Under the pieces are notes generated by a model. It worked only from the letters and a program-made list of their open reading frames with translations, did no database searches and had not been told where the DNA came from. From positions 159,269 through 223,268 of IMG/VR virus record IMGVR_UViG_3300020172_006270: a stretch of 64,000 bases of DNA; one strand, written 5' to 3'. The position numbers were made by a program, and so were the translations under genes. The first letter of the stretch is position 1. The number at the start of each line of letters is the position of its first letter. This document shows positions 4,542 through 22,450 of the stretch, in pieces.

Positions 4542-5339
4542 TCAGTAATTTTTCCAAATCACTTCGACCTTTTTCTCTTTCGTCTTCTGTTGCGACGAGT
4601 GATTTGCAATCTTTTTCTTTTCGACATTCCATTCTTTATACAGTCGATTGTATAAAGGCGAAGCGTATCCGCTAATCATCGCTTTGCCCTGAAATGCGTT
4701 CAAAGCATGAGCCAATTCAATATGATCGTCGGTAGTCATTTCCGACGCATATACGGTTTTGGATACTCGTGTTTCGTGCAAATATGGTGGATCACAATAT
4801 ACGAAAGTATTTGGCGAGTTAAATGCCTTCATGACCTCGGTAGCAGGCTTATTGAAGATATAGACTTCTCTTATTCGCTCTGCTAAATCCGGCAAGCCTT
4901 TTACAGCGGTCATCCATGCGTTGACATCTCCAGGTTGACCGCCTCGTAGACGATTGCTCCAAGCAAATGCTTTTTTCAACCCGCCACGGCTCATGCGTCG
5001 AACAATAAATTCGTTAACCGCTTGATCCAGATAATCGTCGTACTGAGTCTTCTTGCTGGCTCTGTCGAATGTTTCTTCGCAATACTTGCAGAGGTTCAGA
5101 CGCCGAATCAACTCTCTCGGCTCATCTCGTAAAGCCTGATAGATTTGAATGACGTTTGGATCGAGATCGTTCATTATCTCGATGGCAGATTTTTCTTTAT
5201 TCAAAAGGACATTCGCACCCCCACAAAAGGGTTCCAAGTACGTCATTTCTTTGTACTGTTCAGGAAAATGCGAAATGATCCATTGTGCCAAATAGAATTT
5301 TCCACCGTGGCACTTAAACACTGGTCTGATGGTTTTCAT
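4542..5339 (-). CDS. DNA adenine methyltransferase (Dam/D12 class)
   Basis: GGK, YLEPFCGG (motif I), NDLD, YCDPPY (motif IV). Confidence 0.9.
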   Translation of the reverse strand: MKTIRPVFKCHGGKFYLAQWIISHFPEQYKEMTYLEPFCGGANVLLNKEKSAIEIMNDLDPNVIQIYQALRDEPRELIRRLNLCKYCEETFDRASKKTQYDDYLDQAVNEFIVRRMSRGGLKKAFAWSNRLRGGQPGDVNAWMTAVKGLPDLAERIREVYIFNKPATEVMKAFNSPNTFVYCDPPYLHETRVSKTVYASEMTTDDHIELAHALNAFQGKAMISGYASPLYNRLYKEWNVEKKKIANHSSQQKTKEKKVEVIWKNY

Positions 5340-5628: not shown

Positions 5629-5973
5629 ATGAATCCATATTTGCAAGCCTGTCTTCCCGACCAAAGATTGTCAAAAGCGACCCTTTTGGCCATGTTGGAC
5701 AGTCATATTGACACATCAAAGGTGATTGTTGTGTCATCTGGTGAGATTATAGACGTGAGCCAACTGGCTCAAACGGAGATAAACCCTCATTTGAATGATG
5801 GGACGTGGGTGTACTACGAAGACCGCCTCCCAAGGAGGCTGTTGTTGACCAACCAGAACTGGAGAATAGTGAGCTTTAATTCGGCGTCACGTCTGGTTTG
5901 TGTACAGATATTTCCCGCATCGGGTATGCGGGTGCTAAATTTTACATTGCCTCAATTGACGGCAAAATTTTAG
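5629..5973 (+). CDS. Hypothetical protein
   Basis: SD GAGGG, TAAATA upstream. Confidence 0.6.
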   Translation: MNPYLQACLPDQRLSKATLLAMLDSHIDTSKVIVVSSGEIIDVSQLAQTEINPHLNDGTWVYYEDRLPRRLLLTNQNWRIVSFNSASRLVCVQIFPASGMRVLNFTLPQLTAKF

Positions 5974-6230
5974 CCCGCCATTCCGTCTCTAATGCCAACT
6001 ATTACTTTGTCATTTTTAACGGAATAGGCAATTTCGCACCAATCTGAATCCTTGGCAGGATTGTATTTGTGCTTCGCTCTAACCGCCTGGAGAGCCGCTT
6101 TTTCGTATTTTTGCACTATTGCGAGTGCCGCACGCAGTTTTTCAGATTCTTCTCTCGTAATCTCAATGGAGACGTTGGTTAATCCCCAAACTACTCCACT
6201 AGGACCACGTTCGACGCTTTCAAGTTTCAT
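5970..6230 (-). CDS. Hypothetical protein
   Basis: ATGA overlap with gdh stop. Confidence 0.65.
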   Translation of the reverse strand: MKLESVERGPSGVVWGLTNVSIEITREESEKLRAALAIVQKYEKAALQAVRAKHKYNPAKDSDWCEIAYSVKNDKVIVGIRDGMAG

Positions 6231-7492
6231 CTCTGGAAATATCCCTTGTTGCCCAAGCAGGCGTTCGCTGCATTGATTCGCTTCAAAGCTAAGACATATG
6301 CTGCTGTCCGAGCAGAAATATCGTGCTTCATATGCAAGGCGATTACTTTCTCGGTTGCATATACCATCATCTCTCGTAAATCATGATCGACCTCTGGCAA
6401 TGTGCGGCTGATCGCAGTTCGGTTTTGAAGCCATTCAAAATAGCTGACTACAACACCACCAGCGTTAGCCAGAATATCGGGAATCACTAACACTCCACGA
6501 TCATTGAGAATTGCATCAGCCTCATTTGTGGTAGGGCCGTTGGCCATTTCCAAGATCACCTTTGCTTTGATCTTGTCTGCATTGTTAATGGTGATGACGT
6601 TCTCAACAGCAGATGGAGCCAATACGTCAATATCGAGGGACCACAATTCTTCATTGGTGATCTTATCGCCGTCGCCCCATTCTTTGCCACCACTCTCATC
6701 GAGGGACTTGCGGCACGCCGATACATTGAGTCCGTGTTCATTATATGAACCACCAAACTCATTGGTCAGGGCCACCACCTTCAATCCAGAACGGAAGCAT
6801 TTCTCGGCCAACCAATATCCTACCTTTCCGAATCCTTGAATTGCAATTCGGATGTCTTCTGGGTTAGACGGGATATTCACTTTGCTGATACTGTTGTTGA
6901 GAACATTTTCCAGAACGTAATATCCACCATATCCGGTGGCAGAACTTCTGCCTTCAATGCCGCCCAGGGCAACTGGTTTTCCAGTGACAATATCCTTTGG
7001 GTGTCCACCTTTGATTCTTTTATATTCGGAGTACATCCACCCCATGATTCGTTCGTCGGTGTACAAGTCAGGCGCAGGCACATCGACATCAGGACCGATA
7101 AAGTCGATCATGGATGCGATATATGCTTTGCTGAGTCGTTCCAATTCACGGTGCGATAATTTTGTCGCATCAACGCAAATACCGCCTTTGGCACCACCAT
7201 ATGGCAATTTTAAGCACGCACATTTGAACGTCATCCACAGGGCAAGAGCCTCGCAGTGGTCAGCATCTACAGATGGATGGTAACGAATGCCGCCCTTTGC
7301 CGGGCCAAGAGTTGTGTCGTATTGGCATCTAAATGCCTGATACATTTTGAGAGTCCCGTCATCATGTCGCATTGGGATTGTGACATTCAGGGTCTTTTGT
7401 GGATATTGAAGTCGCTGCCAGCTTTCATCATCAATTTCAGCAAATTTATAGGCAGCATCAAGTTGTTTTTTGGCTTCTTCTAACATCGACAT
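6227..7492 (-). CDS. gdhA: Glutamate dehydrogenase (Glu/Leu/Phe/Val dehydrogenase family)
   Basis: GPAKGGIRYHP, LPYGGAKGG, DVPAPD, TGKP, QGFGKVG, EMANGP, PDILANAGGVVVSYFEW. Confidence 0.95.
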   Translation of the reverse strand: MSMLEEAKKQLDAAYKFAEIDDESWQRLQYPQKTLNVTIPMRHDDGTLKMYQAFRCQYDTTLGPAKGGIRYHPSVDADHCEALALWMTFKCACLKLPYGGAKGGICVDATKLSHRELERLSKAYIASMIDFIGPDVDVPAPDLYTDERIMGWMYSEYKRIKGGHPKDIVTGKPVALGGIEGRSSATGYGGYYVLENVLNNSISKVNIPSNPEDIRIAIQGFGKVGYWLAEKCFRSGLKVVALTNEFGGSYNEHGLNVSACRKSLDESGGKEWGDGDKITNEELWSLDIDVLAPSAVENVITINNADKIKAKVILEMANGPTTNEADAILNDRGVLVIPDILANAGGVVVSYFEWLQNRTAISRTLPEVDHDLREMMVYATEKVIALHMKHDISARTAAYVLALKRINAANACLGNKGYFQR

Positions 7493-7584
7493 GAAAAAAT
7501 CCCTCGCACGGTCTGGAATAATGAACCTACAATATTCTAGTATGCGAGGGAGCTAATTCGCAACTGCGAATATTACCAAACCCT

Positions 7585-7890
7585 TCACGGATTTCGACGA
7601 TCTCTAAGCCGTCTTTTTAGCTGCCTTTGTTCTGGTTCCGTTTCTGGCTCTAGTTCTTCGGGTATACTAGGTTCCACCTGTGGTTCTTCTTTTGGCTCCA
7701 CATCAATAGGTGGAGGGACAATTTGAGCAGAGTCGTCCTTCAAAGGACCAGCTTCTTCTTGCCAAGGCTCCACTGTTGGTTTGTCGCCCACGATTTCAGA
7801 AAAGAAATTGGGGTTGTTCTTTTGAACATAAACGCCGCATAGCGCTATAGCTAAGAATGTAGCTATTCCATAAAGGAAATTCCTATCCAT
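7585..7890 (-). CDS. Membrane-anchored Pro/Glu-rich protein
   Basis: N-terminal hydrophobic helix; SD AGGAGG. Confidence 0.7.
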   Translation of the reverse strand: MDRNFLYGIATFLAIALCGVYVQKNNPNFFSEIVGDKPTVEPWQEEAGPLKDDSAQIVPPPIDVEPKEEPQVEPSIPEELEPETEPEQRQLKRRLRDRRNP

Positions 7891-7918
7891 TTGATTGTCC
7901 TCCTATAACAAGGAATAT

Positions 7919-8743
7919 ATGCACAAAATATTGTTCAGCATCGTGCTAACCCTTTGTACTTTTTCCACTCTTGTATTTAGTGAAGAAAGAGACAAAACTC
8001 CAAGGAAGAGACAGGGAACCAATGCAGTTGATAAAAAACTGCACAAACAGTGTATTTACCCAACTGTGAAAATCACAGATGGAGACGAGTCTGGCGGTAG
8101 CGGCGTCGTTGTAAGATCAACCCAAGTCGGGGATAAATGGCACAATACTGTCGTTCTCGCAGCCCATGTTGTTGAAGATGAAGATGTCCTTGAAGTCCAT
8201 GTGGCTGAATACCAGAATTGGTCTGAAATCAAAGACTACAAAAAGCATCGCATGGTGAGCTATGCGATAGACCCAGCCAGAGATTTGGCTGTTGGTTACT
8301 TCGTAAGTGACCAGAAAATGCCAGTGGCAAAACTATGTTTTGAATCAAAACTTTACATAAACACTAAGGTATTCCATTGCGGATATGCCTTATTGGACGA
8401 TGTTAGAATTGACTATGGGCAAGTCACACAGCCTAAAACTCTTCTCCCTAAAGGGTTTCAGGGCTTGATTCGAGCCAATTGCTTTGCCTTTATGGGTGAT
8501 TCAGGCGGTCCATTGTTTTTGGAGGACAATTACCAAGTAATTGGAATTTGTGTCGGCATCCGTTCTCACAGGCACACATTGCTTTCTAATGTGTCTTATT
8601 ATCGTCCTATCTCGGACCTCAAAACTTGGGACGCAGAGCTAAATAATGCTCTTGAATCGGTATATACGGAGTCGGCGGCGTTGCCTTTACTTCCCTTTGT
8701 GAAGTTAAAACTGAAAGAATACGAATACCAGTTGCCAGAATAG
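7919..8743 (+). CDS. Secreted trypsin-like (S1) serine protease (start revised to 7919)
   Basis: Signal-peptide-like N-terminus; triad motifs LAAHVV, RDLA, GDSGGPL. Confidence 0.85.
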   Translation: MHKILFSIVLTLCTFSTLVFSEERDKTPRKRQGTNAVDKKLHKQCIYPTVKITDGDESGGSGVVVRSTQVGDKWHNTVVLAAHVVEDEDVLEVHVAEYQNWSEIKDYKKHRMVSYAIDPARDLAVGYFVSDQKMPVAKLCFESKLYINTKVFHCGYALLDDVRIDYGQVTQPKTLLPKGFQGLIRANCFAFMGDSGGPLFLEDNYQVIGICVGIRSHRHTLLSNVSYYRPISDLKTWDAELNNALESVYTESAALPLLPFVKLKLKEYEYQLPE

Positions 8744-8756
8744 TATGAGGAACTAA

Positions 8757-10298
8757 ATGAGAACATTTACTGAAAGCCTACAAGTCACCACCAATCTCAG
8801 AATGGCCAAAGAATCATTCATTCTGATGTCCGAGCGTGGAGTTGACCCTAATGATTTTGTCGAGTGGTACACAACCGATGGAATCGGCATACAAGACCAG
8901 GGCTTGCTTGTAGAAGCATCCGAAGAATGGTTAGAAGGCCAAATCGCCAACTGGTTTAGAGACTATGCTGGTCAAAAGGGATTAGGCAAAGCTACCAATG
9001 CACTCGCCACAGGAATTGGTGGTGCTGCTGGTGCTGGCTTAGAAACGGCTAAAGGACTCGGTGGTGCCGCAGTTGATAATGCAACTGCTGCTGCCAATAG
9101 AGTTGGTGGGGCATTCAAGGCTGTAACAGGTTGGGGCAATAATCCCGCTCCTGCTTCTCCCGCAGGAGGCTCTGGCACTCCTGGTGGCAATCCCGGTGCT
9201 GCTCAACCACAAGCACAAGCACAAGCACAAGCACAAGCACAACCTCAAGCTCCTGAGCCTGCTTATGCACAACATGCCAAGAATGCGGCGACCGCAGTTG
9301 ACGCACTTTCTAAGCGTATGTCTAAGTCTAAATCGTTGATGGAAAAACTTGGCGGTCCATCTTTCCAAGCGGTAGTTGTTAATTTACTGAATATGCTCAA
9401 GAATCCATCTAATATGGTTCAAGCTGCTCCACAAGCAACTCCACAAGCACCAGCAAGTTCTAGTGCTGACACACCATCTTTTGAGTCAACTGGCTTCGGC
9501 AATTTCACTCGCAAGATTAGACTTCATAATGAAATCAAGACTGGTCTGCGAACTCTTCAACAACATAACATTGATCCTGTCAAGTTTGTTGATTGGTATA
9601 TCGAAGAAGGACAATACCTCAATGAAGGTATGTTTGATGGGGTAAAAGACTGGTTTGGTCGTCAATGGGCTAATGCTAAGGGTGCGTGGGGTCAATGGGG
9701 CAAGGCTGGTGACGAATATCAGGCCCAGAAAGATCAGGGTCGTGATAACGACGCTATTCAGCAAGCAATGCACGCCTTGGGCGAACTTGAAAAGGGAATG
9801 GGAGGCAGTCAGCCAGCAGAAGATTTTGCTGCTGTATTGAAGCAAGTTCAAGCAGGCTTGAATCAAGCATCACAGGCTCCGGCTGCTCCTGAATCACCAG
9901 CCGCCACTCCTGAAGCTGCTCCTGAAGCTGCTCCTGAAGCTGCTCCTGAATCACCAGCCGCCACTCCTGAAACACCTGCTCCATTTGATCCACTACAGTC
10001 ATACATGAAAGAATTGTTGAATGTCTCTAGTGCTGATCCTAAGACCATTCAATCCGAAGTACCAAAGATTATGGACTTTGCCAAGAAAGCAGGAGTCGAT
10101 CAAAACCAATTGTTGTCTCAACTGAAGGCACAGGGAATTGATCTCAAGAAATTGGGATTACCAGAACCAACTTACACTCCACCTTCAGAAGAAGAGTGGA
10201 TGAATGCAGTTCACGGTGGCGCAAACACACCGAGCTTTGAGAATAGAGTTCGTAGTGGAATGCCATTGTTCTTTGAGTATCTTAAACGGCGTGCTTAA
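8757..10298 (+). CDS. Large Ala/Pro/Gln-rich protein with internal duplication, putative internal head protein
   Basis: Repeated (V/I)DPxxFV(E/D)WY module; LVE/LNE/FE sites; QA and PEAA repeats. Confidence 0.7.
   Translation: MRTFTESLQVTTNLRMAKESFILMSERGVDPNDFVEWYTTDGIGIQDQGLLVEASEEWLEGQIANWFRDYAGQKGLGKATNALATGIGGAAGAGLETAKGLGGAAVDNATAAANRVGGAFKAVTGWGNNPAPASPAGGSGTPGGNPGAAQPQAQAQAQAQAQPQAPEPAYAQHAKNAATAVDALSKRMSKSKSLMEKLGGPSFQAVVVNLLNMLKNPSNMVQAAPQATPQAPASSSADTPSFESTGFGNFTRKIRLHNEIKTGLRTLQQHNIDPVKFVDWYIEEGQYLNEGMFDGVKDWFGRQWANAKGAWGQWGKAGDEYQAQKDQGRDNDAIQQAMHALGELEKGMGGSQPAEDFAAVLKQVQAGLNQASQAPAAPESPAATPEAAPEAAPEAAPESPAATPETPAPFDPLQSYMKELLNVSSADPKTIQSEVPKIMDFAKKAGVDQNQLLSQLKAQGIDLKKLGLPEPTYTPPSEEEWMNAVHGGANTPSFENRVRSGMPLFFEYLKRRA
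9209..9242 (+). repeat. (CAAGCA)n microsatellite encoding QAQAQA
   Basis: Tandem hexamer visible in sequence. Confidence 0.85.
9887..9972 (+). repeat. Direct repeats encoding PESPAAT / PEAA
   Basis: gaatcaccagccgccactcctgaa twice, flanking repeated gctgctcctgaa. Confidence 0.85.
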
Positions 10299-11541
10299 TG
10301 ATTTCGATGGCCTCGTCTACGTCGGCCATTGAGAATATCAAATGTGGTCTTAATCGAATTGACCGTTCTCCGCAAGGCAGGACGGTCATTCTTTTTAGTA
10401 GGTTATCTAAGACCGCATTGCGTGCTTCAGGCGTCTCTAAGTCAAACGCCAGCATCAATCCCTTGCCACGAACATTAGTGATGCGTGGAACCGTGAGAAG
10501 CTGCTTCAAGAAGTAGTCGCCTACTATGGCGACCCGATTCAGAATGTCGTCTTCCTTCATGATCTGAGCTATGTGCGTGAATCGGATCATGTCAATAATG
10601 TTGCCGCCCCACGTCGAGTTGATACGACTGGACTGCTTGAATACATTATCGGGAACTTCATCAATACGGGTGGTAGAAGCGAAACCACAGACCTGCGCTT
10701 TCTTCCCGAACGCTATCATATCTGGCCGCAGCCCGGCATGATGTTCGTAGGCCCATGTTGTCCCGGTCAAACCTACGCCGGTTTGAACTTCATCAAGTAT
10801 GAGCATAGCTTCATACTCAAAGGCCATTTTACGCAGGGCTGCAAAGTATTCGGAAGAAAAGTGGTTATCACCCCCTTCGCCTTGAATGGTTTCCAGAATA
10901 ATTGCGGCCACACGGTTTGTCTTGAGAGCGTCTTCTGCTTGTCGCAGCGAGAGTTCTTCGACCACCGTGGTTTCGCTTTCCACCAACGGGAAGTGTATCT
11001 TTGGATTCTTTATTCTGCTCCAATTGAATTTGGGGAACAAGGCAGTCTTATTTGCGAATGTATTGGTTAAAGAGAGTGTGTATCCGCTACGACCGTGGAA
11101 TGCTTGTTCCAGGTGTACGACATCTAGCGAATTAGCGTCGGCTTCGCTGAGGCCGAGTTTCTTCATCTTCCAATCAAATGCTGCTTTCAGGGCATTCTCT
11201 ACGCCCAGGGTGCCGCCTTCGACAAAGAAGAAATGATTGAAGTCTGGTGCAATACCTGCAAACGTATGGACGAACTCAGCCAATGGAACGCTGTAGTAGT
11301 CTGAGTTGGCAATTTTGTGGACAGCATACAGATTGATGCTTTCCATTTTTTCTTTTAGTTTGGGATGGTTCCATCCCAGGGGCATACTTGCGAATTGCGA
11401 GGAGCAATCAAGAAAAGGTTGTCCGGTTTTGGCGTCAACCAAGTGGGTGCCGAAACTTTTTTCAAAATCAATGACAATAGGCTCACCATCGCCGATGGTG
11501 TGTCTTTTCATGACATCATGTACTTGGTCCGGTCTAAACAT
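10282..11541 (-). CDS. lat: L-lysine 6-aminotransferase (class III PLP aminotransferase)
   Basis: VENALKAAFDWK, AFHGRSGYTLSLTNT, ETIQGEGGDNHF, DEVQTG, FGKK, RINSTWGG. Confidence 0.9.
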   Translation of the reverse strand: MFRPDQVHDVMKRHTIGDGEPIVIDFEKSFGTHLVDAKTGQPFLDCSSQFASMPLGWNHPKLKEKMESINLYAVHKIANSDYYSVPLAEFVHTFAGIAPDFNHFFFVEGGTLGVENALKAAFDWKMKKLGLSEADANSLDVVHLEQAFHGRSGYTLSLTNTFANKTALFPKFNWSRIKNPKIHFPLVESETTVVEELSLRQAEDALKTNRVAAIILETIQGEGGDNHFSSEYFAALRKMAFEYEAMLILDEVQTGVGLTGTTWAYEHHAGLRPDMIAFGKKAQVCGFASTTRIDEVPDNVFKQSSRINSTWGGNIIDMIRFTHIAQIMKEDDILNRVAIVGDYFLKQLLTVPRITNVRGKGLMLAFDLETPEARNAVLDNLLKRMTVLPCGERSIRLRPHLIFSMADVDEAIEIIKHAV

Positions 11542-11911
11542 TGAAGAACATCCTCGCCGTGGTCATCAGACAGAGTTGATGAATAAGCTGGTCTAGTCCG
11601 ACTACCACGAAAAATTTATGTACGTCCTGCTTTGCCCAAAAATACTTCGTGAATTGACTGGTGGTAATATCAGTCAGCCAATGTAAAACAAAGTTCACGC
11701 CGATGAACCAGAGGAGAGCTTCGCCGGTTACTTTATCGGCAAATGTAAGCCACGGGTTCAATAGGCCAACAAAGAGGACTAGACTGTATGTAGTGACGTG
11801 TAGGGTTAATGCCCAAGGGTTCTTGCTTTTGTTGTTTGCCATCCATCTGGTTTGGCAAACGAAATCCCCTAACCAATGGTTGAGAAACAAGACCCCTAGC
11901 ATTTCGTACAT
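11534..11911 (-). CDS. DUF3307-like membrane protein
   Basis: HWLGDFVCQT, H..TY, HWLTD, GLDQLIH. Confidence 0.8.
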   Translation of the reverse strand: MYEMLGVLFLNHWLGDFVCQTRWMANNKSKNPWALTLHVTTYSLVLFVGLLNPWLTFADKVTGEALLWFIGVNFVLHWLTDITTSQFTKYFWAKQDVHKFFVVVGLDQLIHQLCLMTTARMFFNV

Positions 11912-13852: not shown

Positions 13853-13988
13853 AGTATTTTATCTCCTTTAATACGAGTGAACTTTTTGTTCACAATAGCT
13901 ATGCAGGCCATATTTTTATTCCGATTTCGTCTACATATCTTCGGGAAAAATATTGCGAAACGTATATAGGGTATACAAGGAGACAATT

Positions 13989-14561
13989 ATGACTTATCAG
14001 TGCGGACCAACATTAAAAGACAGCCAGCGACAAGTATTGTACGGGACCATCCTTGGAGGTTCCTCGATCATTCACCCTGAGCGTGGCAAGAACTGCTACC
14101 TCGCCATGCGTGACCACGACAATATGTGGTTGTCCTATAAGATCGAGGTCTTGAAAGATTTTTTCAAGATCGACCAGAATACCATCAAAAAGGACAAGAA
14201 CACTTACAGGTGTTACAGTGTGGCGTTCCCGATTTTCAATGAAGCGTATGAAATGTACTACAAAGACGGGGCCAAGACGGTCACTCGTGAAATGCTGGAG
14301 ATTTTGACAGACGAAGCCTGGATGGTTTGGTTCGTTGATGCCGGTCGGAAAAGTAAAAGAAAAGCCTATCTGCGAACTCACAAGTTTGGAGAAGAAGGCA
14401 CCAAGATCATAGCGGAATACTTTAATTCCCTAGATTGCTTCTGTGATGTGCATCAATGCCGAGGCAGATACGAAATTGTGTTTACCAACAAGGGAGCTTT
14501 TGAATTGCTTTCAATTATCGCTCCCAAGTTGCCTTCGTTCTTGATTGAGAAGTACGAGTGA
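13989..14561 (+). CDS. LAGLIDADG_2-family protein with degenerate catalytic motifs (start revised to 13989)
   Basis: GTILGGSSI and WFVDAG in place of GxLLGDG / WxMDDG; LRTHKF; SD AAGGAG. Confidence 0.7.
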   Translation: MTYQCGPTLKDSQRQVLYGTILGGSSIIHPERGKNCYLAMRDHDNMWLSYKIEVLKDFFKIDQNTIKKDKNTYRCYSVAFPIFNEAYEMYYKDGAKTVTREMLEILTDEAWMVWFVDAGRKSKRKAYLRTHKFGEEGTKIIAEYFNSLDCFCDVHQCRGRYEIVFTNKGAFELLSIIAPKLPSFLIEKYE

Positions 14562-14590: not shown

Positions 14591-15310
14591 ATGTATGATG
14601 CGGTCATTATTTCTGATTTACACCTTGGCAGCACGATTTGTCAAGCAAAGCAAATTTTGAAGTTTTTGCATCTGATAGAAGAGGATCAGAGCTTCACACA
14701 GAGATTGATCCTCAATGGTGACGTTTTTGATTCATGGGACTTCCGGCGATTATGCAAGAATCAATGGAAGGTATTGTCAAAGCTAAGAAAACTTTCCGAT
14801 GAAATTCAAATCATTTGGATCAACGGCAATCACGATGGTCCAGCGGAGATTATTTCTCAGCTTTTAGGCATTGAGGTTGTTGAAGAACTTATATTTGAAA
14901 GTGGAGACAAAAAAGTATTGGCCTTGCATGGTCATATTTTTGATGACTTCATTAGTGATTACCCTGTGCTTACTTGTTTGGCCGATCAGATTTATCGCTG
15001 GCTTCAAAAGATTCATATCTATTGGGCCAGAAGTGCAAAGAAGTGCAGCAAGACATTTCTTCGTTGCTCCGATAAGATTGAACGAGATGCAAAGAAATAT
15101 GCTATTGCAAAAAAATGTCAAATAGTGTGTTGTGGTCATACGCATTTAGAAATAGAGCATCCAGGTGAAATAGGTTATTTCAATAGTGGATGCTGGACAG
15201 AACTGCCTTGTACTTATTTGATCGTTTCCAATGGAGATGTGTTTGTACACAAATTTTATGATGAGCAAGCAAATAATCATAGCGACGGATGCGTGGGAGC
15301 CGCAGCTTAA
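14591..15310 (+). CDS. Metallophosphoesterase, LpxH2/PlcP-like
   Basis: ISDLHLG, LNGDVFD, GNHD, LHGH, CGHTH, NSGCW. Confidence 0.85.
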   Translation: MYDAVIISDLHLGSTICQAKQILKFLHLIEEDQSFTQRLILNGDVFDSWDFRRLCKNQWKVLSKLRKLSDEIQIIWINGNHDGPAEIISQLLGIEVVEELIFESGDKKVLALHGHIFDDFISDYPVLTCLADQIYRWLQKIHIYWARSAKKCSKTFLRCSDKIERDAKKYAIAKKCQIVCCGHTHLEIEHPGEIGYFNSGCWTELPCTYLIVSNGDVFVHKFYDEQANNHSDGCVGAAA

Positions 15311-16274
15311 CGGCGTTGCCCGCACACTCAAACAAACTGCATACTGTCTCTCACAGATGGGACACACAGTCCAGGTTATTCAACCTGGACTCTTTCGTTC
15401 CGTTCCATGTCCATTCTCTTCTGACGTTAGATTGGCATACGGGATTAAGTCCAAGTATTTAGCAGATGTGATTCAGCGACCTTGTGCGGTTCACATCTCG
15501 ACAGAAGGGCCGATAGGCTTGGCTGTTCGTAGACATTGCATTAAAAACAAAATACCTTTCACCACTGCTTACCACACCAAGTTTCCTGAGTATTTGAAAA
15601 AATATACTCACGTTCCGCTTTGGATGACAAGAAGTTACTTGAGATGGTTTCACGGACCTTCTGAAGCAATCATGGCGACCACGCCGAGCTTGATGTCTTC
15701 TGTTAAAGGCATAAAGATTAAGTCTGATGTGAAACTTTGGACTCGTGGAGTTGATTTTGGTTTGTTTCATCCTCGGCCAAAAACCATTGCGATGGATAAG
15801 CCAGTTGGAATATACGTTGGAAGAATATCAAAAGAAAAAAGCATCGAAGACTTCTTGTCCCTGGATTTGGACATTGAAAAAATCGTGGTCGGCGATGGGC
15901 CTATTCTGAATAATCTTAAACGAAAATATCCACAAGCAATATTTACTGGTCCTTTAAGGGGCGAAGCATTAGCTCAGATGTATTGCAACGCAGATGTGTT
16001 TGTTTTCCCAAGTAAAACTGACACTTTCGGATTGGTCGTATTGGAATCAATTGCGTGTGGCGTGCCTGTGGCCTGCTATCCAGTCGAAGGTCCAGGCGAG
16101 ATCATTGGAGATGGACAAAATCCGGGTATAGGCAAAGCCTCGTGGGATTTGAAAGAGGCAGTAGAACACTGCCTAAAAATAAAATCCGTGCAAGCCTGTT
16201 TGACGTTTGCAAAAAAGCATTCGTGGGAGGCTTGCACGGATCAGTTTTTCAATAACTTAACTTTTGCGGATTAA
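15258..16274 (+). CDS. GT4 glycosyltransferase, Agt-like
   Basis: TDAWEPQLNGVARTL, HISTEGPIG, YHTKFPEY, YVGRISKEK, FPSKTDTFGLVVLE. Confidence 0.9.
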   Translation: MMSKQIIIATDAWEPQLNGVARTLKQTAYCLSQMGHTVQVIQPGLFRSVPCPFSSDVRLAYGIKSKYLADVIQRPCAVHISTEGPIGLAVRRHCIKNKIPFTTAYHTKFPEYLKKYTHVPLWMTRSYLRWFHGPSEAIMATTPSLMSSVKGIKIKSDVKLWTRGVDFGLFHPRPKTIAMDKPVGIYVGRISKEKSIEDFLSLDLDIEKIVVGDGPILNNLKRKYPQAIFTGPLRGEALAQMYCNADVFVFPSKTDTFGLVVLESIACGVPVACYPVEGPGEIIGDGQNPGIGKASWDLKEAVEHCLKIKSVQACLTFAKKHSWEACTDQFFNNLTFAD

Positions 16275-17804: not shown

Positions 17805-18290
17805 CTACTTCTTCAACTGATACAACCCACGTCCCGACCGTTCGATGTAGCCACGTTTGACCATCCGACTCAGTTCGACACTAGGATTGGTGGAGTTTCC
17901 GTGCTTCTCCAGGAAGTCTTTGATTTGCTTCGTGTCCAACGGCCTTCCGTTCTTGCGAAGACATTCTGTAATCAAAGTTCCCGTCGCATCAGACGGTTCA
18001 CGAGTTCGACTTTCAGACCTTGGAGGCTGACTCAGGGTTTGACTCATCAATGGGCCGACATGCTTCCTCAACGAGTCTCGTAAATCGTTGATTTGATTCT
18101 CGTGGCCTTTGATGTCCTGTTTCCGTTCCTCGATCTGTTCTTCGTGCCATTTGATCTTCTCCAAGACCTTTCCAATGGCATTGTGAAGTCCAAGAATCTC
18201 TTGTTCGTCCGTGTCGGCAATGACCGGGGCGACAATCTTTTCCGGTTCTTCTGTTGCGGTGGCGTCCATGCCCTCTTGCGTTGTAGTCAT
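17805..18290 (-). CDS. Coiled-coil + C-terminal winged-HTH protein
   Basis: Heptad region then PLDTKQI...LSRMVKRGYIERSGRGLYQL. Confidence 0.7.
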   Translation of the reverse strand: MTTTQEGMDATATEEPEKIVAPVIADTDEQEILGLHNAIGKVLEKIKWHEEQIEERKQDIKGHENQINDLRDSLRKHVGPLMSQTLSQPPRSESRTREPSDATGTLITECLRKNGRPLDTKQIKDFLEKHGNSTNPSVELSRMVKRGYIERSGRGLYQLKK

Positions 18291-20271: not shown

Positions 20272-20617
20272 GCATTTGATGATAGTTTTTTCCTTTACCT
20301 AAACAAGCCTGCTCGATAAGCGCAATGTAGTAATCATCAAGATTGTCGATGCCGAGTTCTTGCTCGCCGAATCCGTTTTTGCGAAGCAAGTTTCTCATAC
20401 TCATGCCCCAACCAAAATGGTGCGTCACCCACCATCTGGTTGGGCTTTCTTGTATCATATCTGATACAACTTCAATCAAAGGCCGCTCAGGGTCTTTGTC
20501 TTCTTCTTTGCCTGTCTGTTGGGATAGCCAGTTATTCAAAAAAATAATGGCACCATCCAATGTCTTAGGCGGTGAGTCTTTGCTTACTTCCCAAGGGTCG
20601 GTGATTTTGCGTGTCAT
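20240..20617 (-). CDS. Hypothetical protein starting with ITDPWEVS motif (start revised to 20617)
   Basis: ATGA overlap with hydrolase stop; HHFGWGMSMRNLLR. Confidence 0.7.
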   Translation of the reverse strand: MTRKITDPWEVSKDSPPKTLDGAIIFLNNWLSQQTGKEEDKDPERPLIEVVSDMIQESPTRWWVTHHFGWGMSMRNLLRKNGFGEQELGIDNLDDYYIALIEQACLGKGKNYHQMPNPDADNTTK

Positions 20618-21492
20618 CTTCCATCCAATAAATGCGACCAAAGTAAATCGTAATCAATATCAGCCAGGATATAATCCCCTTCGGGATTAGGCTTCGTGGT
20701 CCAACCACTTTCTTCTTTCACGGCATTGCCACGAATCCATTTGCCGATCTCAGGATGCAGATGGCAAGCAGCGGCAGTAGGGTCGTGAAACTTTTTGGAA
20801 TCATGTCGTTCCAAATACATCAATGCTGCCTTCTCAAAGAGATTGTGTGCAGCGACGTTTTTAACGACAACTTGATTGTCTCTCTTTTCCCAGGCTTCTT
20901 TGTTGAATAGAACCGTGTGACAAATGTTCTTGCCGACCATTCGTCGCTCACCAATATTGCCTGAAAGGAATGTAACGCCAGCAGGCCGGTCCCCATTCAG
21001 GTTGAACGTCGGCATCCAGTTCTTTCCCTCGAAATCAAGGTGTGGTTGCTTGGGGCCATAGAGAGAATAAGGCAGGAAGCCGCCCTGCATTGTGGCCCTT
21101 TTGAAATGAGTCTCAGGGTGTTTGCTCATGTATTTGCCAACACTCGAAACCGGGCCGATGATAAACAACTCACTCTCCGGGTAAGCGGCGACAACATCTT
21201 GAATGATGTCTACGCCTAACCCGTCAGCTTTCTGCTCAAGAGGGTAGTTATACTCCTTGAGCAGTTGATGATGAATCGAACCTGAAGACAGCTTGGTTCT
21301 ATCAGTCTTGCTCGTACCGATAGGGATTTTTAGCCCGGTTTCCTCACATAGAAATCTGGCAATGGCTATCTGATCGGGGTCGCCCGGAGAAATGAGTATG
21401 GCTCGAAGATTGACCCCGGCTGCGATCAGATAAGAGATCGCAAAGAAATCATCAGGGTCATGACCAATATCTGTTTCTACAATTAAATCCAT
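20614..21492 (-). CDS. Nucleoside hydrolase (IU-NH family)
   Basis: ETDIGHDPDD, IGP, MQGG, FN, FHDP. Confidence 0.8.
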   Translation of the reverse strand: MDLIVETDIGHDPDDFFAISYLIAAGVNLRAILISPGDPDQIAIARFLCEETGLKIPIGTSKTDRTKLSSGSIHHQLLKEYNYPLEQKADGLGVDIIQDVVAAYPESELFIIGPVSSVGKYMSKHPETHFKRATMQGGFLPYSLYGPKQPHLDFEGKNWMPTFNLNGDRPAGVTFLSGNIGERRMVGKNICHTVLFNKEAWEKRDNQVVVKNVAAHNLFEKAALMYLERHDSKKFHDPTAAACHLHPEIGKWIRGNAVKEESGWTTKPNPEGDYILADIDYDLLWSHLLDGR

Positions 21493-21499
21493 GTTGACA

Positions 21500-22450
21500 T
21501 TATACCTTCTTCCTGTTCGGGGAGAAGCCATTCATTAAAACGTGCAGGGAGTCTAGTCTGGTGTATTCTTCAAATGTCATCCACTCGCTGCCAGTCAACA
21601 ACAGTCTTGCTATTTCTCTTTTACTTTCTTTTTGAGCCTTGGTCCAGTCCAAGTGATGGATGTGCTTCCATAGTCCAACCGTGTAATATACAGCAACAAC
21701 GAGCAGCACGTCCACATATGGCAGTTTCTTTTGTATTTCATGCAACCGTTCTTTGGTGGCATACAGATAAACGTCTGGATACATGCGGTGCATACTTTCT
21801 GGGCCTCTCACATGCAGAGCTTTGACTTCGTGTTCTATTTGAGTCTTCTCAACCAAGGCACAATACAGACCAAATTCATCAAAGGTGTCTGGGTTCTGAT
21901 ACATCGACATGGTGATATGACCACCGAATTCTTCGTCATATTTCTTTTGGTTTTTGGTCAAGAACGTATTGCGAACAAAAGAGAAGTCGATGCCGAACTC
22001 GATTGCATTTTGGACAATGCTGCTGTGAATCGCCTGAGCGCCTTCCCAAATCCTGTTGTGCATAATTTGGTCGTTCAACATGATGTTGCGATATGACCCA
22101 CGAGGCAGAAATCCACGAATCATTTTGGGATCATCTTGAATGGGCGGCTTTGCGAAGAACCAAATATCCTCTTCCATAAACAAAAACCATTCAGGATATA
22201 TTTGGTACTCTTTTATGATTCTGGGAAAATGTTTCCAAAAGTTGATGAATCCGTTTTCCGTCACATTCTGGGCAATGAAGGGAATGTAGGTAACTTGATT
22301 GTCGTTCTTCAGGCCGAAAGACTCAATAAAAGCTGGCAATGTAATGATGAAAATGTGATCGTCTTCCGACAACGCCCACTTCAAGTTTCGTACATGAATG
22401 TCAATTCCATCAGGAAATTGGCCGACCATCGTGATAGATGCAACTCGCAT
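21500..22450 (-). CDS. Putative GT-A glycosyltransferase-like protein
   Basis: FLFMEEDIW (ExD) after a beta-alpha N-terminal region. Confidence 0.45.
   Translation of the reverse strand: MRVASITMVGQFPDGIDIHVRNLKWALSEDDHIFIITLPAFIESFGLKNDNQVTYIPFIAQNVTENGFINFWKHFPRIIKEYQIYPEWFLFMEEDIWFFAKPPIQDDPKMIRGFLPRGSYRNIMLNDQIMHNRIWEGAQAIHSSIVQNAIEFGIDFSFVRNTFLTKNQKKYDEEFGGHITMSMYQNPDTFDEFGLYCALVEKTQIEHEVKALHVRGPESMHRMYPDVYLYATKERLHEIQKKLPYVDVLLVVAVYYTVGLWKHIHHLDWTKAQKESKREIARLLLTGSEWMTFEEYTRLDSLHVLMNGFSPNRKKV

What the first reader, a model, noticed from the sequence alone, without database searches (positions are those of the whole stretch)
6227..11541. Phage-encoded lysine 6-aminotransferase and glutamate dehydrogenase: a possible trans-deamination loop
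Both enzymes look full-length with intact motifs and sit among phage genes. Established: Lat moves the lysine epsilon-amino group to 2-oxoglutarate giving glutamate; GDH interconverts glutamate and 2-oxoglutarate + NH4+ + NAD(P)H. Inference: with the proteases, they could turn host protein into nitrogen and reducing power for nucleotide synthesis. I do not recognise lat as a common phage auxiliary gene.
Basis: partly seen in the sequence, partly recalled or inferred. Interest (0 to 1): 0.62.

Follow-up and report, generated by a model that had tools for sequence, protein, structure and literature searches.

The report
Huge-phage lysine aminotransferase–glutamate dehydrogenase gene pair
A very large freshwater phage carries intact, selected genes for a lysine-type side-chain aminotransferase and a glutamate dehydrogenase, and the pair is inherited together across a clade of 260-690 kb phages, so it looks like an undescribed viral module feeding basic amino-acid nitrogen into the glutamate/2-oxoglutarate pool.

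Summary
Window 10282-11541(-) encodes a full-length LAT-family class-III aminotransferase. It scores 501 bits against TIGR03251 and keeps all 16 M. tuberculosis LAT active-site positions or the usual cellular state. Window 6227-7492(-) encodes a full-length hexameric-type glutamate dehydrogenase.

Both genes are phage genes, not host DNA. The window is the end of a 223-kb fragment of a T4-like huge phage. Its major capsid protein is 80% identical to that of the 595-kb LR756511.1, and about 25 kb around the two genes is collinear with 430-690 kb phage contigs.

LAT followed by GDH 2.7-4.5 kb downstream recurs in about 20 viral loci, against 1 of 80 cellular LAT loci. Viral LATs form one clade (SH-aLRT 99). 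Viral GDHs separate from cellular ones. The two genes' divergences correlate (Mantel 0/2000), and dN/dS is 0.02-0.12.

A sister group of ~160-kb phages places LAT in an operon with an aldehyde dehydrogenase and an arginine-dihydrolase-like enzyme. The window's own phage also has the latter.

The transdeamination reading is coherent and is supported by linkage, but substrate (lysine or ornithine) and GDH direction are not shown. The link to the protease is not supported. I rate it a new auxiliary metabolic gene pair of moderate interest.

The parts
10282..11541 (-). LAT-family (L-lysine 6-transaminase-like) PLP-dependent class-III aminotransferase, 419 aa
   Evidence: Aminotran_3 1.4e-76. TIGR03251 501 bits against a cut-off of 520.8. 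E 1.2e-110 to Mtb LAT 2CIN. PLP lysine K280, glutamate switch E222, R151 and R398 are all kept. dN/dS 0.06-0.12.
6227..7492 (-). Glutamate dehydrogenase, ~420-aa hexameric type, 421 aa
   Evidence: Both ELFV Pfam domains. GdhA_Arch 424 bits, below its 750 cut-off. E 1e-107 to 1e-100 to Pyrococcus, Thermotoga and B. subtilis RocG/GudB structures. dN/dS 0.02-0.03.
7895..8743 (+). Trypsin-like serine protease, 282 aa from TTG 7895; the more likely start is the ATG at 7919. It has a signal-peptide-like N-terminus and lies between LAT and GDH in many relatives.
   Evidence: Trypsin_2 4.9e-13. Sequence read: His, Asp and GDSGG serine motifs are present, with a hydrophobic N-terminus. Homologue between LAT and GDH in about 16 loci.
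8757..10298 (+). 513-aa low-complexity Ala/Pro/Gln-rich protein with two internal repeats, convergent with LAT and overlapping it by 17 nt. Function unknown.
   Evidence: No Pfam, NCBIfam or PHROG hit. Sequence read. Variable-length homologues (502-608 aa) at the same place in L003, L005-L008. Its QA repeat at 9204-9250 breaks short-read contigs.
7585..7890 (-). 101-aa ORF upstream of GDH with an N-terminal hydrophobic segment and an acidic, proline-rich tail
   Evidence: Sequence read. No family hit. Homologues in L003 and L005.
11534..11911 (-). DUF3307 small membrane protein. Its stop overlaps the LAT start by 8 nt, so the two are probably co-transcribed.
   Evidence: PF11750 1.3e-09. phrog_2470 1.9e-20. 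Coordinates.
5970..6230 (-). 86-aa ORF overlapping the GDH stop by 4 nt, co-directional with GDH and Dam
   Evidence: No family hit.
4542..5339 (-). Dam-type N6-adenine DNA methyltransferase, the syntenic anchor downstream of GDH in the module
   Evidence: MethyltransfD12 7.6e-26. Found 4-8 kb downstream of LAT in 23 loci.
13953..14561 (+). LAGLIDADG homing endonuclease, the syntenic anchor upstream of LAT
   Evidence: PF03161 1e-23. Homologue near LAT in 35 viral loci.

Best explanation
The two genes are auxiliary metabolic genes of a T4-like huge phage of freshwater and sediment, with a genome probably 480-600 kb. Inside the infected cell they work as a pair coupled through 2-oxoglutarate and glutamate.

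The LAT-family enzyme moves the side-chain (omega) amino group of a basic amino acid onto 2-oxoglutarate. By active-site conservation the substrate is most likely L-lysine. The products are glutamate and a semialdehyde that cyclises to piperideine-6-carboxylate.

The glutamate dehydrogenase connects that glutamate to 2-oxoglutarate, NH4+ and NAD(P)H. With 2-oxoglutarate recycled, the net reaction deaminates the lysine side chain. It releases usable nitrogen, reducing power and a TCA-cycle intermediate during a long, costly infection.

What is shown: the enzyme families, intact catalytic residues, phage location, conserved linkage, co-inheritance and purifying selection. What is inferred: the substrate, the GDH direction and cofactor, the coupling in vivo and the benefit to the phage.
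For: Enzyme identity and residues:
- Families were identified.
- All Mtb LAT active-site and PLP-pocket positions listed in PMC9780415 are kept in the window protein and in every viral group. These are G128, F167, H168, R170, E238, E243, D271, V273, Q274, K300, N328, S329, T330 and R422. V63 is F here, as in 65 of 80 cellular LATs.

Phage location:
- Capsid, portal and terminase genes lie in the window.
- The major capsid protein is 79.8% and the large terminase 53.4% identical to the 595-kb phage LR756511.1.
- 32 of 38 ORFs of a 21-kb stretch of a 602-kb contig hit G000 in collinear order around the pair.

Linkage and co-inheritance:
- GDH lies 2.7-4.5 kb downstream of LAT in about 20 viral loci, on the same strand in the loci whose gene maps or coordinates I read. 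LAT identity across these loci runs from 44 to 96%. The contigs include ones of 428, 669, 693 and 532 kb.
- Only 1 of 80 cellular LAT loci has a GDH within 6 kb.
- The viral LATs form a 54-row clade with SH-aLRT 99, apart from the best 80 cellular species hits at 46-50% identity.
- Cellular GDHs reach at most 46% identity and fall on one side of a branch.
- LAT and GDH pairwise identities correlate (Spearman 0.61, Mantel 0 of 2000).
- dN/dS is 0.02-0.12.

Catabolic context:
- A sister viral subclade has an ALDH, arginine-dihydrolase-like, LAT operon.
- 26 of 80 cellular LATs sit beside an aldehyde dehydrogenase.
Against: - There is no biochemical or expression evidence. No RNA run holds the region.
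- The TIGR03251 score is just under its trusted cut-off.
- In this phage LAT and GDH are not one operon. Two genes on the other strand separate them.
- Each gene can be lost alone in close relatives. GDH is replaced by a DUF6065 gene in the 602-kb contig. LAT is a deletion-plus-frameshift remnant in L005.
- About half of the viral LAT loci with adequate flanks lack GDH.
- No gene for removing the piperideine-6-carboxylate product was found in the 223-kb fragment: neither an aldehyde dehydrogenase nor a P5C-reductase-type enzyme.
- The arginine-dihydrolase-like partner in related viruses, and in G000 itself, points to ornithine as a possible true substrate.
- GDH cofactor and direction cannot be read from the sequence.
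Confidence: 0.55

Rival explanations
1. This would be a Roc-like arginine/ornithine route. The LAT-family enzyme would really be an ornithine delta-aminotransferase. It would act after the phage arginine-dihydrolase-like enzyme (arginine to ornithine plus NH3 and CO2). An aldehyde dehydrogenase would then give glutamate, and GDH would give 2-oxoglutarate plus NH4+.
For: - In all 22 loci of the ~160-kb phage subclade, LAT lies directly after an aldehyde dehydrogenase and an arginine-dihydrolase/DDAH-like gene.
- G000 itself encodes an arginine-dihydrolase-like protein. It covers the whole NF052232 model at 257 bits, which is below that model's 450-bit cut-off.
- The 381-kb record G041 has all four enzymes.
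- The megaphage ALDHs are 48-58% identical to the operon ALDH.
- The GDH is as close to B. subtilis RocG as to any solved GDH.
Against: - The active-site signature is that of lysine aminotransferase and matches typical cellular LATs.
- The best HMM by a wide margin is LAT, not ornithine aminotransferase: 501 against 138 bits.
- The same operon also carries a saccharopine-dehydrogenase-like gene, which is lysine chemistry.
- The arginine-dihydrolase-like gene is missing from two complete relatives.
Confidence: 0.2
2. This would be glutamate supply rather than deamination. GDH would run in the assimilatory direction (NH4+ plus 2-oxoglutarate plus NADPH to glutamate). LAT would be a second, parallel source of glutamate. 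Together they would enlarge the glutamate/glutamine pool that donates nitrogen for nucleotide synthesis.
For: - The closest NCBIfam and JGI labels are NADP-type or archaeal GdhA.
- Both reactions yield glutamate.
- Nitrogen-assimilation genes such as glnA, asnB and GDH are listed as viral auxiliary genes in surveys (PMC9356048, PMC13196213).
Against: - No glutamine synthetase or asparagine synthase was found in the 223-kb fragment.
- The same GDH subfamily includes catabolic NAD enzymes.
- Direction cannot be inferred from sequence.
Confidence: 0.2
3. There would be no functional coupling. LAT and GDH would be independent accessory genes that merely share a conserved syntenic block with Dam, the LAGLIDADG gene and the VWA gene.
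For: - The whole ~25-kb block is collinear, so linkage alone is expected for any two genes in it.
- Each gene is lost alone in close relatives.
- They lie in different transcription units here.
Against: - The intervening genes vary: protease plus disordered protein, or Fe-S biogenesis plus thioredoxin, or DUF6065. LAT followed by GDH persists down to 44% LAT identity.
- The two enzymes share the 2-oxoglutarate/glutamate pair by their established chemistry.
Confidence: 0.12
4. The region would be host DNA, through a provirus flank, binning error or chimeric assembly.
For: - IMG/VR labels the record 'provirus'.
- Both enzymes are typical cellular families.
Against: - No integrase was found in the record.
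- GC content is even across the window, 0.42-0.50.
- Phage genes lie on both sides of the pair, collinear with many independent assemblies including L003 from another sample.
- Among relatives the CheckV/IMG-VR figures rate as complete, a 572-kb genome with terminal repeats carries LAT and Dam, and a 532-kb record (itself flagged 'provirus') carries LAT plus GDH.
- Contigs of the likely source run match at 100% identity.
- The best cellular identity is 50% for LAT and 46% for GDH, against 53-98% among phage contigs.
Confidence: 0.01

Closest known systems
Bacterial L-lysine epsilon-aminotransferase (M. tuberculosis Rv3290c, PDB 2CIN; TIGR03251 family) and the LAT / piperideine-6-carboxylate dehydrogenase lysine catabolic route
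   Same: Same fold and family (E 1.2e-110). Every listed active-site residue, including the glutamate switch, is kept. Related viruses and 26 of 80 cellular loci pair LAT with an aldehyde dehydrogenase.
   Different: The viral sequences form their own clade at no more than 50% identity to cellular ones, and the score is just under the family cut-off. In megaphages the linked partner is GDH rather than the dehydrogenase. No activity has been measured.
B. subtilis Roc arginine catabolism (arginase RocF, ornithine aminotransferase RocD, P5C dehydrogenase RocA, GDH RocG); the pathway is recalled from general knowledge
   Same: The logic is the same: a class-III omega-aminotransferase, an aldehyde dehydrogenase and a RocG-type GDH funnel a basic amino acid to 2-oxoglutarate plus ammonium. 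The viral gene pool holds counterparts of all four steps, and G041 has all of them.
   Different: An arginine-dihydrolase-like enzyme stands in place of arginase. The aminotransferase is of LAT type, not OAT type. The genes are scattered in the megaphage genomes. Nothing has been tested.
Viral auxiliary metabolic genes for nitrogen metabolism (glnA, asnB, and occasional GDH calls in virome surveys)
   Same: A host-type metabolic enzyme carried in a virus genome. GDH has been listed as a viral AMG in a hadal-ocean survey (PMC9356048), and glnA and asnB on a rumen viral MAG (PMC13196213).
   Different: No paper in the searched library links lysine aminotransferase with phages. Here the two genes form a conserved, co-inherited pair with virus-specific clades, not a one-off capture.
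Huge phage LR756511.1 (595 kb, uncultured)
   Same: Major capsid protein 79.8%, large terminase 53.4% and LAT 56% identical. It shares the VWA gene and the neighbouring 334-aa gene.
   Different: It has no GDH and no arginine-dihydrolase-like gene.

Membership tests
L-lysine 6-transaminase family (TIGR03251) | Whole-protein HMM score at or above the curated cut-off (520.8 bits) | tested here: not met
   501 bits, full-length match 4-418 on 1-431/433. The next model scores 211 bits. This is a marginal miss.
L-lysine 6-transaminase family (TIGR03251) | PLP Schiff-base lysine and PLP pocket of Mtb LAT (K300, D271, Q274, E238, F167, H168, G128, S329, T330) | tested here: met
   K280, D250, Q253, E217, F148, H149, G110, S309 and T310 correspond by alignment. 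They are conserved in all viral groups. The residue list comes from PMC9780415.
L-lysine 6-transaminase family (TIGR03251) | Substrate-recognition residues: the Glu243 switch, Arg422, and Arg170 that binds the lysine carboxylate | tested here: met
   E222, R398 and R151 are invariant. V63 is F here, as in 65 of 80 cellular family members.
L-lysine 6-transaminase family (TIGR03251) | Transamination of the epsilon-amino group of L-lysine to 2-oxoglutarate | not testable with these tools
   Needs an enzyme assay. Ornithine remains a candidate substrate because of the arginine-dihydrolase-like partner.
Glutamate dehydrogenase (ELFV family, ~420-aa hexameric type) | Both ELFV domains over the Pfam cut-offs | tested here: met
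   176.9 and 206.3 bits against cut-offs of 25.3 and 23.4.
Glutamate dehydrogenase (ELFV family, ~420-aa hexameric type) | NCBIfam equivalog cut-off (GdhA_Arch 750 bits, GdhB_Halo 620 bits) | tested here: not met
   424.5 and 412.1 bits. These are lineage-specific models, and the viral clade is at most 46% identical to the cellular GDHs sampled.
Glutamate dehydrogenase (ELFV family, ~420-aa hexameric type) | Glutamate-type motifs: lysine in GPxKGG (leucine in Leu/Phe dehydrogenases), GGxKGG, PAPD, the Rossmann GxGxxG and NAGGV. Residue roles are from general knowledge. | tested here: met
   All are seen in the alignment to 1GTM.
Auxiliary metabolic gene of a virus | Located inside a bona fide viral genome with viral genes on both sides | tested here: met
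   The record is only about 46% complete.
Auxiliary metabolic gene of a virus | Expressed during infection and changes host metabolism | not tested
   No RNA run holds the stretch, and there is no cultured host.

The most novel reading that the evidence does not exclude
A large group of uncultured freshwater, sediment and marine phages would share a virus-specific, mix-and-match catabolic toolkit for basic amino acids. The group spans 260-690 kb megaphages, ~160-kb phages and some T4-like phages. The toolkit comprises an arginine-dihydrolase-like enzyme, a LAT-type omega-aminotransferase, an aldehyde dehydrogenase, a saccharopine-dehydrogenase-like enzyme and a GDH. It would convert host lysine and arginine pools into glutamate, 2-oxoglutarate, ammonium and NAD(P)H. 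That would be a near-complete viral amino-acid degradation pathway maintained for a very long time, not a single borrowed gene.
Probability: 0.3. Interest if true: 0.7.

Novelty: new member of a known kind. Interest (0 to 1): 0.5.

Why it matters
Phage auxiliary metabolic genes for nitrogen are known mostly as single assimilation genes. Here two enzymes share a cosubstrate pair, have virus-specific clades, stay linked across deep divergence and are strongly selected. Related viruses add the neighbouring pathway steps.

If the chemistry holds, huge phages would actively break down host basic amino acids to fund their very large genomes. That bears on how megaphages meet nitrogen and energy costs in nutrient-poor waters, and on viral effects on amino-acid and ammonium turnover. 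It also provides ready-made, compact enzymes for a simple in vitro test.

Tried and rejected
- **Host contamination or provirus: rejected.** No integrase was found, GC is even, and the region is collinear with independent huge-phage assemblies. The 5' end of the record holds methyltransferases, glycosyltransferases and a DnaB-like helicase rather than host markers.
- **Protease as supplier of lysine: not supported.** It has a signal-peptide-like N-terminus and is absent from several module variants.
- **The 513-aa and 101-aa ORFs.** No family hit in Pfam, NCBIfam or PHROGs. By eye they are low-complexity or membrane-anchored, so I left them as unknown.
- **Promoter and terminator scan.** Promoter-like sites were no more frequent than in shuffled sequence, so transcription units rest on gene overlaps only.
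- **tRNA scan of the window.** None found.
- **Downstream enzymes in the 223-kb fragment.** Aldehyde dehydrogenase, P5C reductase, glutamine synthetase and asparagine synthase were all absent. The fragment is only about 46% complete, so this is weak evidence.
- **LR756511.1.** It has neither GDH nor the arginine-dihydrolase-like gene.
- **Whole ENA/JGI contigs behind L006, L007, L090 and L091.** These could not be searched because they are not held.
- **Literature.** No paper pairs lysine aminotransferase terms with phage, and the megaphage plus aminotransferase hits were irrelevant.
- **GDH cofactor preference.** I judged it not predictable from sequence, so no claim is made.

Full report
**What is there.** The stated coordinates are the outer ends of two minus-strand ORFs, 6227-7492 (421 aa) and 10282-11541 (419 aa).

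The first is a glutamate dehydrogenase.
- It carries both ELFV domains (E 1.8e-52 and 7.6e-61).
- It aligns over residues 8-409 with P. furiosus GDH at E 7.9e-107. It is about equally close to the Thermotoga enzyme and to the B. subtilis RocG/GudB enzymes.
- The GPAKGG, PYGGAKGG, PAPD, Rossmann and NAGGV motifs are present in that alignment.

The second is a class-III aminotransferase.
- Its best curated model by far is TIGR03251, L-lysine 6-transaminase. It scores 501 bits against 211 for the next model, but sits just under the 520.8 cut-off.
- It matches M. tuberculosis LAT at E 1.2e-110.
- I took the active-site list for that enzyme from PMC9780415 and mapped it through the alignment. K300, E243, R422, R170, F167, H168, E238, D271, V273, Q274, N328, S329, T330 and G128 are all retained.
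- V63 is Phe here, which is also the state in 65 of 80 cellular family members.
- Both proteins are full length against their homologues.

Five other ORFs lie between and beside the two genes:
- a 101-aa membrane-anchored acidic ORF at 7585-7890(-);
- a trypsin-like protease with an intact catalytic triad and a signal-peptide-like N-terminus at 7895-8743(+);
- a 513-aa low-complexity protein at 8757-10298(+);
- a DUF3307 membrane protein at 11534-11911(-), overlapping the LAT start;
- a Dam methylase at 4542-5339(-), downstream of GDH.

**It is a phage, not host DNA.** The window is the last 64 kb of a 223,268-bp IMG/VR record with an estimated completeness of 46%.
- The window contains a T4-type major head protein, a portal and a large terminase.
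- The capsid protein is 79.8% and the terminase 53.4% identical to the 595-kb uncultured phage LR756511.1.
- The record is flagged 'provirus', but it has no integrase and GC is even across the window.
- Its far end carries methyltransferases, glycosyltransferases and a DnaB-like helicase rather than host markers.
- In a 21-kb stretch of a 602,679-bp metagenome contig, 32 of 38 ORFs hit the record in strict collinear order across the LAT/GDH region. Stretches of 428-, 669- and 693-kb contigs behave likewise.
- Related IMG/VR records carry the same capsid family. They include a 572-kb genome with terminal repeats and a 532-kb record flagged 'provirus', both rated complete by the CheckV/IMG-VR figures.
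- An independent 21-kb assembly (L003) holds LAT, the disordered ORF, the protease, GDH, Dam and the VWA gene in one piece at 93-99% protein identity for every gene except the low-complexity ORF (78%).
- Contigs of the likely source run match at 100% and break only at the QA repeat of the disordered ORF.
- Near-identical or related sequence occurs in freshwater, lake and sediment metagenomes from 19 studies. None is an RNA run.

**The pairing is a conserved viral feature.** A scan of IMG/VR with a LAT alignment returned 72 loci.
- In about 20 viral loci a GDH of 63-98% identity lies 2.7-4.5 kb downstream of LAT. It is on the same strand in the loci whose gene maps or coordinates I read. A Dam gene usually follows, and the protease often lies between.
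- The genes in between vary. One 693-kb contig has Fe-S biogenesis and thioredoxin genes there instead.
- Among the 80 best cellular LAT loci, drawn from 185,579 species genomes, only one has any GDH within 6 kb, at 36% identity.
- On a maximum-likelihood tree of 147 LATs, 54 viral sequences form one clade (SH-aLRT 99) and the cellular ones sit on the other side. GDH-linked members are spread through the clade, including its deep branches, which fits an old linkage with later losses.
- Cellular GDHs from 40 diverse genomes reach only 46% identity. They fall on one side of a branch from the viral sequences and the top metagenome hits (support 84).
- Across 19 genomes that have both genes, LAT and GDH pairwise identities correlate (Spearman 0.61; no permutation of 2000 was as high).
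- Both genes are under strong purifying selection. dN/dS is 0.02-0.03 for GDH and 0.06-0.12 for LAT.
- The pair is not obligatory. In the closest 602-kb relative a DUF6065 gene replaces GDH and the protease. In L005 LAT is reduced to a frameshifted remnant (residues 1-21 and 245-419) beside an intact GDH.

**Context that bears on function.** A 19-row LAT subclade without GDH belongs to phages of about 160 kb. One of them is a 161-kb record rated complete that has a terminase-like gene.

In that subclade LAT sits in a co-directional array:
1. glyoxalase-like protein;
2. aldehyde dehydrogenase;
3. arginine-dihydrolase/DDAH-like enzyme;
4. LAT;
5. a short nucleotide-sugar-dehydrogenase-like protein;
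6. often a saccharopine-dehydrogenase-like protein.

The window's own phage encodes a homologue of the arginine-dihydrolase-like enzyme about 140 kb away. It covers the whole arginine dihydrolase model at 257 bits, below that model's cut-off. Two of five related large records have this enzyme too.

Three megaphage-type records carry an aldehyde dehydrogenase that is 48-58% identical to the operon enzyme. The cellular LAT-adjacent ones are only 29-38% identical. One 381-kb record has LAT, GDH, the dihydrolase-like enzyme and the aldehyde dehydrogenase together.

In cells, 26 of 80 LAT loci have an aldehyde dehydrogenase nearby. This is the expected lysine-catabolic pairing. The viral LAT clade is therefore consistently embedded in the catabolism of basic amino acids towards glutamate.

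**Most likely mechanism.** The two enzymes share the 2-oxoglutarate/glutamate couple through their established chemistry. The aminotransferase would load a side-chain amino group onto 2-oxoglutarate. GDH would link the resulting glutamate to 2-oxoglutarate, ammonium and NAD(P)H.
- The active-site signature favours lysine as the substrate.
- The arginine-dihydrolase-like partner keeps ornithine in play, which would be a Roc-like route.
- The GDH could instead run towards glutamate.

Direction, cofactor, substrate and in vivo coupling are all inferences. In this phage the two genes are in separate transcription units, and no RNA data exist. I put 0.55 on the coupled side-chain deamination reading, 0.2 each on the ornithine and glutamate-supply variants, about 0.1 on mere synteny and about 0.01 on host DNA.

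**Comparison and novelty.** The enzymes are ordinary members of well-known families, although both fall below lineage-tuned equivalog cut-offs. No cultured phage in a 50,697-record collection has a LAT homologue above 30% identity. The only close hit is one uncultured 595-kb phage. The other GDH and aminotransferase hits in that collection are low-identity or lie on records that look like bacterial contigs.

The searchable literature has no paper that links lysine aminotransferase with phages. GDH appears only as an occasional item in AMG lists. The finding is thus a new auxiliary metabolic gene pair, a new member of a known kind. It has the added interest of virus-specific clades and a wider viral toolkit around it.

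**Limits.**
- The record is a fragment.
- The trees are unrooted quick searches.
- The cellular sampling for GDH is only 40 genomes.
- Some IMG/VR loci are duplicates of one another.
- The absences reported for fragments are weak evidence.

Noticed in passing
L009 (ena:ERZ25039540:contig_19076, 933,350 bp; last 12.9 kb seen): A LAT homologue (61% identity) sits at the end of a 933-kb contig. The visible genes look like megaphage genes: a LAGLIDADG endonuclease, an intein-bearing thymidylate kinase and a metallophosphatase, in the same order as in the window. If the whole contig is phage, it would exceed the largest phage genomes I know of (about 735 kb, from memory). It could also be a concatemer or a chimera.
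   Followed up: no
L005:10001-10580 (IMGVR_UViG_3300032462_000002): In a close relative (GDH 97% identical) LAT is a remnant. Residues 1-21 and 245-419 lie in different frames, and about 220 codons are deleted. The flanking genes are intact.
   Followed up: partly
L109-L160 group, e.g. L112:7193-13121: Phages of about 160 kb carry an operon of glyoxalase-like protein, aldehyde dehydrogenase, arginine-dihydrolase-like enzyme, LAT, short UDP-glucose-dehydrogenase-like protein and saccharopine-dehydrogenase-like protein. It lies next to a DNA polymerase III alpha gene. In L109 a class-I fructose-bisphosphate aldolase is also nearby.
   Followed up: partly
G000 C1:20064-21350 and C1:27308-28132 (L162:2065-3351 and 9309-10133): The same phage record encodes an FAD amine-oxidase-family protein (Amino_oxidase 5.4e-50) and an arginine-dihydrolase-like protein. 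A histidine phosphatase, large glycosyltransferases and a radical SAM/SPASM enzyme lie beside them.
   Followed up: partly
window 13953-14561 (+): A free-standing LAGLIDADG homing-endonuclease gene holds a conserved position near LAT in 35 viral loci. That is unusually stable for a mobile endonuclease.
   Followed up: no
window 9204-9250: The CAAGCA-type repeat that encodes the QAQAQA run in the 513-aa ORF attracts hundreds of unrelated metagenome contigs. Summed depth there is 400-1700 against about 13. Short-read contigs break at this point.
   Followed up: yes
window 6218-6264, in run X4: A relative about 95% identical, from a sediment metagenome, has 893 extra bases between the GDH stop and the downstream 86-aa ORF.
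   Followed up: no
window 17805-18290 (-), 20614-21531 (-), 14591-15310 (+), 15231-16274 (+): Neighbouring genes include an AbiEi-antitoxin-like HTH protein, an inosine-uridine nucleoside hydrolase, a metallophosphoesterase and a GT4 glycosyltransferase. The hydrolase and the phosphoesterase recur in the related megaphage loci.
   Followed up: no
IMG/VR records G042, G043, G046, G047, G051 and G000: Several of these 170-530 kb records are flagged 'provirus', although they carry T4-type capsid genes and no integrase was found in G000. The flag may come from their glycosyltransferase-rich, host-like stretches.
   Followed up: partly
L141, L155-L158, L161 (GVMAG records): LAT-like genes at 32-47% identity also occur on giant-virus (GVMAG) contigs. 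Four of them form a long-branched group next to the phage clades.
   Followed up: no
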